Source: Perna viridis
Lineage: Eukaryota
Assembly: GCA_037379345.1 (NCBI GenBank)
Contig: CM074515.1
Location: 8,308,001 to 8,372,000 of the forward strand
Direction: 5' to 3'
DNA: 64,000 nt
Each line of letters begins with the position of its first letter. The stretch's first letter is position 1. Shown one piece after another: positions 51,897-59,922 of the stretch. Made by a program: the position numbers and the translations under genes. A model generated the notes under the pieces. That model was not told where the DNA came from. It did not search any database and worked only from the letters and a program-made list of their open reading frames with translations.

Positions 51897-52081
51897 TTAA
51901 TTCATTTCATCGACATCTGAGAGTACGGGATCGAAGTCAGAGATCTGTGAGACGAGATCATCTTGCGCCATGAATGTCGATACTGTCGACCCAGTACAGT
52001 TGTGGTGCAGACTTGGTAACACTGCTCTTCCCCCACGTGCTAGGGATCTAGGATGGACACATATGCCACGTGTTTGTCCAG
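51897..52081 (-). CDS. SHFL: SHFL last coding exon
   Basis: GQTRGICVHPRSLARGGRAVLPSLHHNCTGSTVSTFMAQDDLVSQISDFDPVLSDVDEMN*. Confidence 0.9.
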
Positions 52082-55000
52082 CTAAAAGATGTACATATCA
52101 TATACCTTTATAAAAAAATCATCAAAAATAGTTTCTTCAATGCACACATGTTATTGTGTTGATTCTCTGTTAAATGAAAATATCGGGTTCATACATATTT
52201 AAATAAAAAATTCAAGACAAAACCCATTTAATTAATACAAAAAATTGAAATCTTTAGTTTTTGGTTGAATATACGAAAGGCCGTCTTGTCAAGTCATTTG
52301 TATCATTGCTTTATTGCATTCTCAAACTTGAAATTGTAGATATGCCTTGCCAGGTAAAGTCTGTCATGTCGGTTGAAATGTTAATCTGACCAAATAACAC
52401 ACTTTTTAATGTTCTTTCACTTGTGATTGTGATACACAGCTTCTGTGTAGAAAATTGTTTGAAAATCTAAAAAGTCGCACTTGAAAATATATCAGAAAGT
52501 ATTTAACTTCTTTGCACACGAACTGTTTCGACCACCTCCTTTTTTCTCGAGAAAACAATTTGTCCGCCCGATGCTTTTATTTGATAAAAATAAATCGTAT
52601 TTTTTGCCTGTTTCTGAGCCCATTCATTGAAAACATAAAACACACACACACACACACACACAAACACACACACGCAAATGCCTAATATTAGATTTTTGAT
52701 ATTAGGCATTTTTGTTATATTTTCAATAAACATAACAGGAGTTTGGTCTTTTCAACTAAACCATATAACTACGTCACTAAACCAGGATGCAGTAGAGTAG
52801 AGTATGGAAAACATTTTGAATTACCAACTTTCATATCTAGCATGCATGAGGATATAACCATCCTTTTCGTACGCGGGATTCAGTCCTTTTTTAAAGCGTA
52901 TGCAGTACTCTCGCATGCGAGAACTGGACGCAAGAGACTTCTTAAATTGGACTCGGAATCAGAGTTGTAATTTACGCTGGACTCGCTGTCATTTCAGATA
53001 GTACGCTGGACTCAATGGGGCGAAGACCCCCCCCCCCCCAAGATCCCTCTACCACTTTTGGTTCCAAAAAGGTTGGCATGTATACATTAAGCTGCTGATC
53101 GGTGTGGTGTCCATAGTCCTTCATACGAGATCAAAATGTATTAAATTATGAAACATTCCACGTTATGCCGCATAGCGTCATAGTTCTAGCTTCAACCGAG
53201 ATAAAATGTACCTCTTCAATATGTGTGTTCTACGTGTGTTTCTTGATTGTATGAGAACGGGAAGAGTACGTGAGCAGAACATCACCCAGTTTCCGATTCA
53301 GGCACATTGGCTCGTTACAAGACGATATAGGTCACATACATTAGCACGGCCCCGATTTCTATAAATATTCATTACCAGTTGTTTAATTTGGTTCCTAATC
53401 TAGTTTCCTGATGACATGATCGGTAAGCATTGAATTTATATAATATAAACCCTTTTGTGCTAACGATAGGTTAGTCCATGAGCATGTTCTATATGAGCAT
53501 GCATAGAGCATGCTCAATATACACTTCCGCGAGGACAATTCTTTTGTTCTGCCCTAGCCCTACCTCGCGGAAGTGTATTTTGAACATGCTCATCAACTTA
53601 CCCTAAAAGAATCTATTACAAAGTTTCCGATTCAAAAACAACGACTCGTTATAATTAACTACATAGGTCATATGCATTATCTATATATAGCCATTGCCAG
53701 TGGTAAAATCTGTTTACAGCAAGTTGAAAAGAACCAGTTCCAATTTCAATACAAATCTTGGATCTAGGTAGAAATCTGCCCTACATTATACCAATGTGTC
53801 CTACTTTACTACCACAGAACACCTGTGTGATCTTTTGGACACTGCCTTTAGAGTTCGAATAGATGTCAATTACGATGAGCTTAACTTCTAAATGTCAAGT
53901 AAATACAACTCACTGAGGCCTTTAATAAATCATTGTTAAATTTTCTGTACTGGTACATTTTCAAGTTTATATTTTAGGGCATCTTATAAAAACAGTCACT
54001 GTAAACCAAAAAAAAAAAACTAAATAAATAAATAATGATACTAGTATTTACAATCACTTTACAACATTTATTTAACATTTTTTTTGAAACTATTTAATTT
54101 TAAGAAGGTACGAAAGCCCATTAGTGCCAGGAGTTCACTTATATTTAAGTCGTTATAACGACTTAGTATCTCGTTTAAACGACTTAGCATCTCGTTTAAA
54201 CGACTTTGTATCTCGTTTTAACGACATAGCTAACAACGCAAGTTATGTCGTTATAACGAGTTATTAAGTCGTTTAAACGAGATACTAAGTCGTTTAAACA
54301 AATAAACTATGTCATAATAACGAGATACTAAGTCGTTTAAACGAGCGAGATGCTAAGTCGTTTAAACGGGTTAACTATGTTGTTAAAACGAGATACTAAG
54401 TCGTTTAAACAAATAAGCTATGTCATAATAACGAGATACTAAGTCGTTTAAACGGGTTAACTATGTTGTTAAAAAGAGATACTAAGTCGTTTAAACGAGA
54501 TGCTAAGTCGTTTAAACGAGTTAGCAATGTCGTTTAAATAAGATACTAAGTCGTTTAAACGAGTTAGCAGAGTCGTTTAAACGATATACTAAGTCGTTAT
54601 AACGACTTGAAAATAAGTGAACACCTGGTACTAATGGGCTTCCGTAAGAAGGTCCTTAAAAGGATTGGTGCATGCATTTATATTGCAAACTGAAAACGGC
54701 CATTTTGCAAAAGTGTAATGAATGTTACCATAATTTTAAGCTCTTAAAACTACTTCAGCTAGAAAGAATCTCAGTTTAACAATGTATGACCATCAAATTC
54801 TTTCTAAAAAGGTTTAAGCATTCAGTTCAATTAAGTAAATGAAACTGAAAATAGGCACTCACGATATGTGAACATGTAAAAACTTCTATGTTTTAATTTC
54901 ACGACCGCCCCCTTTTGCGGTCATACCAATTATGGAAGATGCGCATTTTCTTATGCTTAACATTCCTTTAAAAGTTTTTAACAAAAGGTGTGGACAAACG

Positions 55001-58000: not shown

Positions 58001-59922
58001 CCAAAACAAATGCCAAAGAAGAATCCAGGGTATATTTTGGCCAGAGAAGATAACAAACGAGGACCTGTTAAGAATGTGTAAATGCCATTCCATTGCAACA
58101 GACCTAAAAAAGAGACGCTTCAGATGGCTAGGTCACGTGTTCAGAATGCAAAATGACCGCCTGCCAAAAATTGCCCTACGATGGACACCACATGGGAAGA
58201 GGAAACCGGGCAGACCTTGCACCACCTGGAGGAGAAGAGTGCTAGCAGAGCTAGAAGAACTTGGTTACAGCCTTGGCGAGGCTCAACACCTGGCCCCGGA
58301 CAGAGACAAATGGCGGGATCTTGTTATCGCCTTATGTCCCACTGGGGATGAAGAGGATAGGTGAGGTGAGGACAGGGGGTCCATGTCTCCTTTCTCTCGT
58401 CCCGTCTCTCCTATCTCCTACCCTTTCCTCCTCTTTCCCATCCCTTTCCCGTTCTTTTGCCAAAATGGCCTGAAATACGTTTAATTATGCATTCCCTTGG
58501 CTCATGAGATATCGAAGATGCTACATAAATGTGTTTGAATATACAAAAGTTGGTTTGAAGTAGTGTACTTGAAAAAAATGCATATTACAGGTTAAATGGA
58601 AGAAAATATGAAATTCCAAAAATTTCCCTTTTTATGAAAAGCTCATAATTGTTAACTTGAAACTACAAATAAACGAGGATGAAATTAGCAGATATGTTGG
58701 ACACATCGATTATTAAAACCGAAATACCCAACATTACTATTGTGCACATTTATAAGCTAAAACTTATCATTTTGGTTCATGTTGAGGTTTTTTTTTTCAT
58801 GGGTAGGGATGGCACTTTTTCACCTGATTGGACTTGAAAAAGTTCAAATTTTTATAACTCTGGCTCATTAGAAAGCTTCTACTCTATATAACTGTATCTG
58901 ATAACAAACGCTTATTTGAAGTAGGATAATTGGAAAAAAACACCAAAAAGAAATTCTAAGCTCCTCAATTGATCAGATATTTTAGGTACAACATTATCTT
59001 AATTATGAATGCCTAAAATGTGAGTTTTACAACTTGTGCTTTGAATGAGAACTGTTTGATACTGAGGCCGGTTTGTTATGGGTAGGAGTAATAATTTTAA
59101 CGTTTTTGAAAATTCTTCCTTGAAAATTGGTATTTCGTGGTTTATTCATGTAGAAAATGAGATTATCTATCGAATGATACCACATTTGAGACGTTTTAGT
59201 TCAGCAATAACTCGTAGAGTCGAAATTAAGTGACTTTTTACGGGAAAATCGAAAATCCAATATTTTGCATTTTTTTTTTTTTATAAATTCTGACTACGAT
59301 AATCGCCATAAGTTATCAAAAGAACCCCAGAAGTATTGATTGTGATAACACTAAATAGAAAATATAAAATAAGCCATTTCTTACTGAGGCATAGATACTG
59401 TAAGGGTTTTGCCATTGAAAAATATGTCAAATTAAGCGATTTTTCGGTGCGGTAGGGGTACATTTTTATCTTTTTACTCCAAACCATAAGTGTTACCGCA
59501 ATTTTCTTGATACCATTGTATAGCTGAGACATTCATGATTGTACTATATGTTGGTACCTGCATACGTCAATTTACTTCTTTTTGTAGAAAGTATAAGTTC
59601 GAATAATCAAAAAACGTAAAAAAATGGAGTTTTGCCTCAACGAGGTATAAAAAGTAGCCAAAAAAATACAAAAATGCTTCAGTTTATTTTTACCAAAAGA
59701 GGTATAAAGGTAGCTGCCAATCATATTTTGGTTGATGAGTGGGGGGTGCACGGGGGATGTTGTCTCAGCCCACGTACTAAATGTACTTACTTTTTTTCTA
59801 GTTGGAACTTTTCTCCACCAAACATTATCACATGGCTGACATGCGTATTGACGATCTTCATATGGGACGGTATTTTGTAGGGCTAATTCCTTCCATCTCC
59901 TATTATTCCGTACGATTTCAAA
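51897..59922 (-). CDS. SHFL: Shiftless antiviral inhibitor of ribosomal frameshifting homologue (SHFL/RyDEN/C19orf66), last four exons, 193 aa
   Basis: Exons 59791-59922, 55516-55619, 55061-55221, 51897-52081; GT-AG; phases 0/2/1; 582 nt ending in TAA. Translation includes [59 protein letters not shown]...SPCFRC...[11 protein letters not shown]...CVHPRS...PSLHHNCTGSTVSTFMAQ. This follows, motif by motif, human SHFL as I recall it (RQFAC..CDHVWWRRVP.RKEVSRCRKC...WG.AEF.C..C.H.FRG...SPCY.C...HSC....CYNR...C.HP.S...H.SSGSTV). Confidence 0.92.
52640..52675. repeat. (CA)n microsatellite
   Basis: Direct reading. Confidence 0.85.
53497..53593. repeat. Hairpin / short inverted repeat in the last SHFL intron
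   Basis: gagcatgctcaatatacacttccgcgagg ... cctcgcggaagtgtattttgaacatgctc. Confidence 0.7.
54109..54646. mobile_element. Non-autonomous TIR element (IS3EU-like) with an internal ~21-bp tandem array
   Basis: Termini TACGaAAGCCCATTAGT / ACTAATGGGCTTCCGTA; flanking direct repeat agaagg; interior units aagtcgtttaaacgagatact. Confidence 0.75.
55061..55221 (-). CDS. SHFL: SHFL exon
   Basis: [53 protein letters not shown]. Confidence 0.9.
55516..55619 (-). CDS. SHFL: SHFL exon
   Basis: [35 protein letters not shown]. Confidence 0.92.
56357..58370 (+). mobile_element. RTE-clade LINE with an intact RT core, antisense within an SHFL intron
   Basis: ORF 57057-58364: NWRGVTLLS, QAGFRKGR, DFRKAFDSV, RQGSILSP, FADD, RWLGHV; upstream APE end SDHYL; (GTGAG)n tail. 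Confidence 0.92.
59791..59922 (-). CDS. SHFL: SHFL exon (first seen in window)
   Basis: TTTTTTAG acceptor; [50 protein letters not shown] donor. Confidence 0.9.

What the first reader, a model, noticed from the sequence alone, without database searches (positions are those of the whole stretch)
51897..59922. Spliced Shiftless (SHFL/RyDEN) homologue in an invertebrate, almost missed by the ORF track
Seen: four short exons splice in frame to 193 aa with four CxxC pairs, an Arg-rich [10 protein letters not shown] segment, WWRKVP, HSC....C, CVHP and H..TGSTV, with no stops or frameshifts. Known: vertebrate SHFL is an interferon-stimulated RNA-binding restriction factor that inhibits -1 programmed ribosomal frameshifting and restricts RNA viruses. 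Inference: this mollusc-like genome has an intact anti-recoding effector without classical interferon, possibly acting on viruses or on frameshift-dependent LTR retrotransposons. Invertebrate homologues are annotated by similarity, but I know of no functional characterisation.
Basis: partly seen in the sequence, partly recalled or inferred. Interest (0 to 1): 0.85.

Follow-up and report, generated by a model that had tools for sequence, protein, structure and literature searches.

The report
Mollusc Shiftless (SHFL) gene, intact, expressed
This is a real, intact and transcribed bivalve copy of Shiftless, the zinc-finger protein that in vertebrates blocks viral ribosomal frameshifting; such copies are already annotated by similarity across molluscs, so the gene is ordinary and only its function there is unknown.

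Summary
On the minus strand, four exons with GT-AG borders (59922-59791, 55619-55516, 55221-55061, 52081-51897) read in frame to 193 codons. Each hits Pfam UPF0515/SHFL at consecutive profile positions (89-264) and human Shiftless (PDB 9KBO) at residues 90-271. All twelve zinc ligands of the three human zinc fingers are kept, and three of the four phospho-sites.

The gene continues past the window. Two more coding exons, 1.1 and 1.7 kb beyond base 64000, are joined in spliced RNA contigs from three studies. A nine-codon ATG exon 5.7 kb beyond the window is only a candidate. With it the CDS is 255 codons.

The genome holds two more paralogues. The closest proteins are Mytilus 'shiftless ... homolog' predictions (47-71% identity per exon), and this family is routinely annotated across molluscs. 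This is an ordinary, intact, expressed member of a known family.

Anti-frameshifting or antiviral action in a mollusc is inference only; I found no functional study.

The scan's earlier notes hold nothing on this gene.

The parts
51870..51875 (-). AATAAA, candidate polyadenylation signal 22 nt after the stop codon
   Evidence: Read directly. No RNA 3' end was examined.
51897..52081 (-). Last coding exon (exon g), 185 nt, stop TAA at 51899-51897. It encodes the fourth ligand of zinc finger 3 (the Cys of CVHP), the Ser/Thr loop TGSTVST and a short acidic tail.
   Evidence: Pfam PF15135 positions 221-264, E 5.7e-5. Aligns to human SHFL residues 223-271. 70% identical to Mytilus P0020.
52082..55060 (-). 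Intron f-g, 2979 nt, GTATAT...TTTTAG
55061..55221 (-). Exon f, 161 nt. It encodes the second knuckle of zinc finger 2 (CFRC) and the H-x-C-x4-C of zinc finger 3. It corresponds to human residues 164-214, which include the 164-199 stretch needed for frameshift inhibition in human cells.
   Evidence: Pfam positions 165-212, E 1.7e-12. Human SHFL residues 165-213, E 2.5e-5. Human data from PMC10750386 and PMC12716391.
55222..55515 (-). Intron e-f, 294 nt, GTTGGT...TTACAG
55516..55619 (-). Exon e, 104 nt. It encodes the second knuckle of zinc finger 1 (CRRC, Arg-rich) and the first knuckle of zinc finger 2 (CSRC).
   Evidence: Pfam positions 130-163, E 4.7e-12. Human SHFL residues 129-162, E 9.5e-11.
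55620..59790 (-). Intron d-e, 4171 nt, GTAAGT...TAACAG. It carries a LINE-type reverse-transcriptase ORF on the opposite strand.
   Evidence: RVT_1 E 6.7e-31 for 57057-58361 on the + strand.
59791..59922 (-). Exon d, 132 nt. It encodes the end of the N-terminal helical region and the first knuckle of zinc finger 1 (CQPC), then WWRKVP.
   Evidence: Pfam positions 89-129, E 4.1e-9. Human SHFL residues 90-127, E 7.4e-9. An RNA contig of run X6 joins it to the upstream exon c: its loose end equals the reverse complement of 59893-59922.
59923..64000 (-). In-window part of intron c-d. The intron runs on to L014:1071, which is 1071 bases beyond base 64000. It holds reverse-transcriptase remnants on the minus strand. 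Three more exons lie outside the window, in L014 (= G000:C5:8372001-8382000): exon c at L014:1118-1072, exon b at L014:1802-1691, and candidate ATG exon a at L014:5707-5681.

Best explanation
This is an intact, transcribed, multi-exon gene on the minus strand encoding a bivalve member of the Shiftless (SHFL, C19orf66, RyDEN, UPF0515) family.

Structure shown:
- Six coding exons are shown: b and c just beyond the window, and d, e, f, g inside it.
- A seventh, a nine-codon ATG exon, is a candidate. With it the CDS is 768 nt, or 255 residues.
- The protein keeps the human architecture: the start of the N-terminal helical domain, two CCCC zinc ribbons, one HCCC zinc loop, and the buried Ser/Thr loop.

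Mechanism, inferred from human SHFL and not shown here:
- The zinc-finger module binds structured RNA and translating ribosomes.
- It lowers the yield of -1 frameshift products and can also restrict viruses by other routes.
- In a mollusc it would have to be driven by something other than classical interferon.

My odds: about 0.97 that it is an SHFL-family gene, about 0.9 that it is expressed and spliced as modelled from exon b to exon g, about 0.6 for the ATG exon, and about 0.4 that it inhibits -1 frameshifting in this animal.
For: - Family: four exons hit PF15135 collinearly, three of them above the gathering score on their own.
- Human alignment: the same exons align to human SHFL (PDB 9KBO) at residues 90-127, 129-162, 165-213 and 223-271.
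- Zinc ligands: the twelve ligands listed for the crystal structure are C112, C115, C132, C135; C155, C158, C174, C177; H203, C205, C210, C223. All align to Cys or His in the window. They are invariant or nearly invariant in 31 homologues.
- Charged partners: human R121, R126, K127, R131, R136, R138 and H244 are kept; K227 and K236 become Arg.
- Exon b: aligns to the N-terminus of Ostrea and Pomacea proteins and to residues 14-46 of a fish SHFL (E 3e-5).
- Exon c: fits in phase with canonical splice sites.
- RNA: the b/c joint, with GT..AG ends on the minus strand, appears in contigs of three runs from three studies, with no depth inside that intron. One contig continues from exon c into the first 30 nt of exon d. 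The off-stretch lengths of two contigs equal d+30 and d+e+f+29 nt.
- Proxy fold: an AlphaFold model of the nearest Mytilus protein (pLDDT 82) matches only 9KBO in the PDB (E 1e-18, TM 0.57).
Against: - There is no functional data for any invertebrate member.
- The start-codon exon is not confirmed: no a/b joint was listed, and one contig (X1) reads straight through the exon-b acceptor into upstream sequence.
- The N-terminal region is much shorter than the human helical bundle. It gets no Pfam match to profile positions 1-88, and exon b alone does not find 9KBO.
- The residue matching human phospho-Ser256 is Ala.
- There is no poly-Glu tail.
Confidence: 0.85

Rival explanations
1. It is a true SHFL-family protein, but in molluscs it does not act on frameshifting. 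It could be a general RNA-granule or P-body RNA-binding protein, or it could restrict viruses by other SHFL routes such as degrading viral proteins or viral RNA.
For: Human SHFL has several reported activities besides frameshift inhibition: it localises to P bodies, binds MOV10, and promotes degradation of viral NS3 or 3D proteins. The short human isoform still inhibits HIV-1 without inhibiting frameshifting. Here the N-terminal domain is shortened and one phospho-site is lost.
Against: The part needed for frameshift inhibition in human cells is zinc fingers 2 and 3, including residues 164-199. This is the best conserved part here, with all ligands intact.
Confidence: 0.35
2. It is a decaying or redundant paralogue: one of three copies, with a lost or unusable start exon, transcribed but not making a full protein.
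For: The genome has three loci. No in-frame ATG lies between the in-frame stop at L014:1859-1857 and exon b. One RNA contig is unspliced at the exon-b acceptor. The ATG exon is only a candidate.
Against: The 741 nt of exons b to g are open with canonical splice sites. Every zinc ligand is kept. Identity to Mytilus is 47-71% in every exon, including the 5' ones. Spliced RNA appears in three studies. A good ATG exon exists: it is the only ATG with a strong phase-0 donor in 8 kb, is single-copy, and matches 5 of 9 residues of the Mytilus edulis N-terminus.
Confidence: 0.05
3. It is a chance set of open frames, or a zinc-finger gene of another family.
For: Short exons rich in Cys can match many zinc-ribbon models weakly. 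Exon e also touches IBR_1 and Zn_ribbon_RPB9 at E 0.01-0.05.
Against: There are four collinear hits to one family. There is a reciprocal hit to human SHFL only. Spliced RNA is present.
Confidence: 0.01

Closest known systems
Human Shiftless (SHFL/C19orf66/RyDEN/IRAV, UniProt Q9NUL5, PDB 9KBO)
   Same: Same Pfam family. The order of parts is the same: N-terminal helices, zinc ribbon 1, zinc ribbon 2, HCCC zinc loop, Ser/Thr loop, acidic end. All 12 zinc ligands are kept, as are most basic residues around zinc finger 1 and three of the four phospho-sites.
   Different: About 255 residues against 291. The helical N-terminal domain is far shorter (about 75 residues against 101) and is not recognised by the Pfam profile. 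Ala replaces Ser256. There is no poly-Glu tail. Exon f covers human residues 164-214, whereas the human alternative segment is 164-199. Interferon control is not possible in the vertebrate sense. Activity is untested.
[quoted passage not shown]
   Same: These are the nearest relatives, with 57, 47, 68, 71, 64 and 70% identity to P0020 for exons b to g. They share a first coding exon ending in phase 0 with a GTATGT donor and a first intron of about 4-5 kb.
   Different: The candidate first exon here has 9 codons, against 12 in M. galloprovincialis. Exon b starts about 10 codons later. The tail is shorter. All of these proteins are computer annotations without experiments.
The two other SHFL-like loci of the same genome (G000:C3 about 53.7745-53.7763 Mb, minus strand; G000:C8 about 32.8530-32.8561 Mb, plus strand)
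   Same: They have the same four conserved exons in the same order, with zinc knuckles.
   Different: They are much more diverged from the window copy and from the P0020-type Mytilus proteins. The C3 copy reads CVSD where the family has CVHP. Their expression was not examined.
ZAP-S (ZC3HAV1 short isoform), another host inhibitor of viral -1 frameshifting (own knowledge; a ZAP paper was listed)
   Same: It works alike in vertebrates: a zinc-finger RNA-binding protein that lowers frameshift efficiency.
   Different: It is not homologous. It has CCCH fingers and belongs to a different family. It is no part of this finding.

Membership tests
SHFL / UPF0515 (Pfam PF15135) | Match to the family profile above the curated cut-off (29.8 bits) | tested here: met
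   Exons d, e and f score 36.7, 46.3 and 47.8 bits each on their own. Exon g scores 23.1 bits. The profile positions are collinear, 89-264. The whole-genome six-frame search gives the same result.
SHFL / UPF0515 (Pfam PF15135) | Zinc finger 1, a CCCC zinc ribbon (human C112, C115, C132, C135) | tested here: met
   CQPC in exon d and CRRC in exon e align to these residues.
SHFL / UPF0515 (Pfam PF15135) | Zinc finger 2, a CCCC zinc ribbon (human C155, C158, C174, C177) | tested here: met
   CSRC in exon e and CFRC in exon f align to these residues.
SHFL / UPF0515 (Pfam PF15135) | Zinc finger 3, an HCCC short zinc-binding loop (human H203, C205, C210, C223) | tested here: met
   HSCQAQNC in exon f and the Cys of CVHP in exon g align to these residues.
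SHFL / UPF0515 (Pfam PF15135) | Ser/Thr loop (human S249, T250, T253, S256; reported invariant in vertebrates) | tested here: inconclusive
   S, T and T are kept. The fourth position is Ala here and Thr in most molluscs. Phosphorylation itself cannot be tested here.
SHFL / UPF0515 (Pfam PF15135) | N-terminal helical bundle (human residues 1-101) | tested here: inconclusive
   Exon b aligns to fish SHFL residues 14-46 (E 3e-5) and to the same column block in the family alignment. But there is no Pfam match to profile positions 1-88, no hit to 9KBO with exon b alone, and the region is about 25 residues shorter. The model of the Mytilus proxy is helical there.
SHFL / UPF0515 (Pfam PF15135) | Overall fold like the human crystal structure | tested here: inconclusive
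   This was tested only on the nearest Mytilus protein, not on the window's own joined peptide. 9KBO was the only significant PDB match (E 1.3e-18, TM 0.57, 273 columns).
SHFL as a functional class (interferon-stimulated inhibitor of -1 programmed ribosomal frameshifting) | Induction by interferon or by infection | not testable with these tools
   The runs are coded and their conditions are unknown. The contigs only show that spliced RNA exists in three studies.
SHFL as a functional class (interferon-stimulated inhibitor of -1 programmed ribosomal frameshifting) | Lowers -1 frameshift efficiency; binds frameshift RNA and ribosomes | not testable with these tools
   A reporter or in-vitro translation assay is needed. 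This has been shown only for human SHFL (PMC8310280, listed; PMC12716391).

The most novel reading that the evidence does not exclude
Bivalves keep a small, expressed family of Shiftless paralogues that acts without interferon as a standing or infection-induced brake on -1 frameshifting. Targets would be RNA viruses or the many gag-pol frameshifting retroelements of these repeat-rich genomes. Anti-recoding defence would then predate the interferon system.
Probability: 0.25. Interest if true: 0.6.

Novelty: new member of a known kind. Interest (0 to 1): 0.3.

Why it matters
The gene itself is routine: an orthologue of a family that genome pipelines already name in many molluscs. Its value is as a test case. 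It is intact, expressed, and keeps the whole zinc-finger core that human work ties to frameshift inhibition. A recombinant bivalve protein could therefore show whether this activity is older than interferon. It could also show whether the activity bears on viruses and retroelements of farmed shellfish.

Tried and rejected
- Joined peptide: I built or searched none. Every search was done exon by exon, by reference.
- Library-wide HMMER search with exon f alone: only 9 hits. The top one, P0001 (3085 aa), is a low-complexity artefact annotated Ca_hom_mod. Useful hits were P0005 and P0007.
- The window's own protein did not appear in either homologue search. No annotated model or transcript-derived protein could be used.
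- Pfam and PDB searches with exon b alone found nothing.
- Looking for the ATG exon by local alignment of Mytilus N-termini gave only noise-level scores.
- Rejected ATG candidate L014:1973-1968 (two codons, donor GTGCTG). No joint was listed, and an X4 contig runs unbroken across it.
- Rejected ATG candidate L014:6377-6315. Its donor score is -1.0. The moderate RNA depth of its bin can be spill-over from the adjacent high-copy repeat.
- Reads were laid on the 5' region. The junctions 59791/55619, 55516/55221 and 55061/52081 were therefore not seen as joints.
- No a/b joint was listed.
- Run X24 gave nothing on the exons.
- Literature: no paper pairs Shiftless with Crassostrea or Mytilus. One octopus transcriptome merely lists a homologue.
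- Earlier notes of the scan hold nothing on this gene.
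Full report
**What is in the sequence.** The window is AT-rich (GC 0.29-0.41). The ORF list shows only short frames in 51.5-60.5 kb, apart from a transposon ORF.
- 59922-59791, 132 nt.
- 55619-55516, 104 nt.
- 55221-55061, 161 nt.
- 52081-51897, 185 nt, ending in TAA.

Each exon has a pyrimidine-rich ...AG acceptor and a GT donor. The phases fit, the two split codons read Arg and Ala, and the total is 193 codons without a stop. 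AATAAA lies 22 nt after the stop.

**Is it more than chance, and what family.** Each exon was searched separately by reference.
- All four exons hit a single Pfam family, PF15135 (UPF0515, the SHFL family), at consecutive profile positions: 89-129, 130-163, 165-212 and 221-264. E-values run from 4e-9 to 6e-5. Three exons exceed the curated cut-off on their own.
- Against PDB sequences, each exon's best hit is 9KBO, human Shiftless. The alignments cover residues 90-127, 129-162, 165-213 and 223-271.
- The paper describing that structure (PMC12716391) names the zinc ligands: ZF1 is C112, C115, C132, C135; ZF2 is C155, C158, C174, C177; ZF3 is H203, C205, C210, C223.
- In the alignments every one of these twelve residues is matched by Cys or His in the window. 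'HSC....C' plus 'CVHP' is ZF3.
- 'TGSTV' is the buried Ser/Thr loop that is phosphorylated in human cells. Three of its four sites are kept; the fourth (human S256) is Ala here.
- Basic residues that contact this loop or line the first basic pocket (R121, R126, K127, R131, R136, R138, H244) are also kept.

**The rest of the gene.** The profile's first 88 positions are not matched anywhere in the window or the genome, so I looked for 5' exons by homology.
- Library searches gave full-length mollusc proteins.
- tblastn of these against the DNA just past the window (L014 = G000:C5:8372001-8382000) found exon b at L014:1802-1691. It has 37 codons plus one base and carries the family's LRELFRGRF motif.
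- A local alignment then found exon c at L014:1118-1072, 47 nt.
- Both have canonical splice sites.
- Exon b also aligns to residues 14-46 of a fish SHFL (E 3e-5).
- In a family alignment, the six exon peptides tile the Mytilus protein P0020 from its 23rd residue to its end. Identities are 57, 47, 68, 71, 64 and 70%.

**RNA evidence.** Runs that hold the locus were found. Contigs of four runs were laid on L014:1060-7059.
- Three runs from three studies (X1, X4, X6) each have a contig with the joint 1118/1691. It skips 572 nt with CT..AC ends, which is GT..AG on the minus strand. Depth inside that intron is zero. These runs therefore behave as RNA, and the b/c junction is exact.
- In X6 the contig continues beyond base 1072 with 30 letters. 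They equal the reverse complement of window 59893-59922, the start of exon d. The c/d junction is therefore exact too.
- The parts of the X1 and X4 contigs that lie off the laid stretch are 162 and 426 nt. These equal d+30 and d+e+f+29 nt. That is what a 31-mer assembly gives if the contigs end where another path merges at the acceptors of exon e and exon g. The 29 rather than 30 fits, because the last base of exon f and the last base of the intron are both G.
- This is arithmetic, not a seen joint.

**The start codon.** No in-frame ATG lies between an in-frame stop (L014:1859-1857) and exon b, so a further exon is needed.
- The X4 contig ends exactly at the exon-b acceptor (1802), and depth shows the same for X6. 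The X1 contig reads through to 2006, where a high-copy repeat begins. I read the X1 contig as unspliced precursor.
- A scan of 8.2 kb upstream looked for an ATG followed, without a stop, by a phase-0 donor of fair strength. It gave a single candidate, L014:5707-5681: nine codons (MANVTVIRE) and then GTATGT.
- For the candidate: it matches 5 of the first 9 residues of a Mytilus edulis protein. M. galloprovincialis has a 12-codon first exon with the same donor, the same phase and a 4.8-kb first intron. The sequence is single-copy in this genome. Low-depth collinear RNA contigs cover 2362-5678, which is just the span of the would-be intron, and stop there. TATA-like sequence lies about 110 nt upstream.
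- Against the candidate: no a/b joint was listed.
- I give it about 0.6. With it the CDS is 27+112+47+132+104+161+185 = 768 nt, or 255 residues. That is similar to mussel and oyster proteins of 247-280 residues.

**Context.**
- The genome (723 Mb, 46 contigs) has two more SHFL-like loci, on C3 and C8. Both have the same four conserved exons but are much more diverged.
- The introns of the window gene carry retroelement debris: a LINE reverse transcriptase on the opposite strand in intron d-e, and reverse-transcriptase remnants in intron c-d.

**How it probably works.** Shown here: a spliced, open gene whose product keeps the complete zinc-binding core of human SHFL. An AlphaFold model of the nearest Mytilus protein was used as a proxy, because the window's joined peptide was not submitted. 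It has pLDDT 82 and finds only 9KBO in the PDB (E 1e-18, TM 0.57).

Inferred from human work:
- The protein binds RNA.
- ZF2 is proposed by the authors of the crystal-structure paper as the module that recognises frameshift RNA.
- The region around residues 164-199, which lies in exon f here, is needed to inhibit -1 frameshifting.
- The N-terminal part plus ZF1 carries other antiviral activity.

The best-conserved part in the bivalve is exactly ZF1-ZF3, so RNA and ribosome binding is likely. Frameshift inhibition is plausible, at about 0.4.

Differences that could matter are the short N-terminal domain, the Ala at the fourth loop site, and the missing poly-Glu tail. In a scallop relative the N-terminal module is duplicated, and one copy scores as a UBA-like domain. 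Exon b itself gave no such hit.

- mussels and oysters: Mytilus, Ostrea, Saccostrea, Crassostrea;
- scallops and clams: Argopecten, Mizuhopecten, Mercenaria, Ruditapes, Dreissena;
- gastropods: Pomacea, Haliotis, Babylonia, Littorina.

Unnamed PF15135 proteins also turn up in Octopus and in the annelid Paralvinella. In the held literature I found no experiment on any invertebrate member. Only an octopus transcript list mentions one. A 2025 structural paper speaks of conservation 'from zebrafish to humans'.

The gene is thus a new member of a known kind. The open question is functional: does the anti-frameshifting activity predate interferon? This gene would be a suitable reagent to test that.

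**Verdict.** Family membership is met on every sequence feature I could test, with two features only partly met (the N-terminal domain and the fourth phospho-site). The functional reading is untested. Interest 0.3.

Noticed in passing
window 56285-58364 (+ strand), inside intron d-e: ORFs of a non-LTR retrotransposon on the strand opposite to the gene. The 435-aa ORF at 57057-58364 hits RVT_1 (E 6.7e-31) and DUF6451.
   Followed up: partly
window 60346-61688 (- strand), inside intron c-d: Retroelement remnants on the gene's strand. A 97-aa ORF gives a weak RVT_1 hit (E 0.002). A 222-aa ORF has no Pfam match.
   Followed up: partly
L014:about 2007-2460 and about 5822-6260 (2.0-2.5 and 5.8-6.3 kb beyond the window end): Two blocks with very high summed depth in RNA contigs (10^3 to 5x10^4), many internal deletion-type joints and many loose ends. 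They look like high-copy transcribed repeats. The second shows an 'opposite strands' joint (5854/6051), suggesting an inverted-repeat element. It sits directly upstream of the candidate first exon and promoter.
   Followed up: no
G000:C3:53774492-53776238 (-) and G000:C8:32852970-32856086 (+); loci L004-L011, L015: Two further SHFL-like paralogues with the four conserved exons. The C3 copy reads CVSD where the family has CVHP. Their expression and 5' exons were not examined.
   Followed up: partly
Proteins P0017 and P0018 (Mytilus edulis and M. galloprovincialis isoforms X2): These predicted isoforms skip exactly the counterpart of exon d, which holds the first knuckle of zinc finger 1. The X1 contig ends 30 nt into exon e. 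That would fit a second path into exon e in this species too, either exon skipping or intron retention, but this was not shown.
   Followed up: no
Protein P0036 (Argopecten irradians): The N-terminal module (LxELxxGRF ... helices) is duplicated in tandem. The second copy passes Pfam's cut-off for the UBA-like domain UBA_4 (25.5 bits, E 1.1e-5). This hints that the mollusc N-terminal domain is UBA-like.
   Followed up: partly
L014:1803-2006: In run X1 the mRNA contig is not spliced at the exon-b acceptor and continues 204 nt upstream. In X4 and X6 the contigs stop exactly at the acceptor. In X4 a separate contig of lower depth (18 against 74) covers 1874-2011. This could be precursor RNA, an alternative start site, or an assembly effect; it is unresolved.
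   Followed up: partly
window 52577-52733: A (CA)n/(TG)n microsatellite in intron f-g, seen as CVCVCV and HTHTHT frames in the ORF list.
   Followed up: no
Protein P0001 (3085 aa) from the library search: This was the top hit to exon f, with 18 matched stretches. It is a repetitive protein whose only Pfam family is Ca_hom_mod. The match is a low-complexity artefact, not an SHFL relative.
   Followed up: yes
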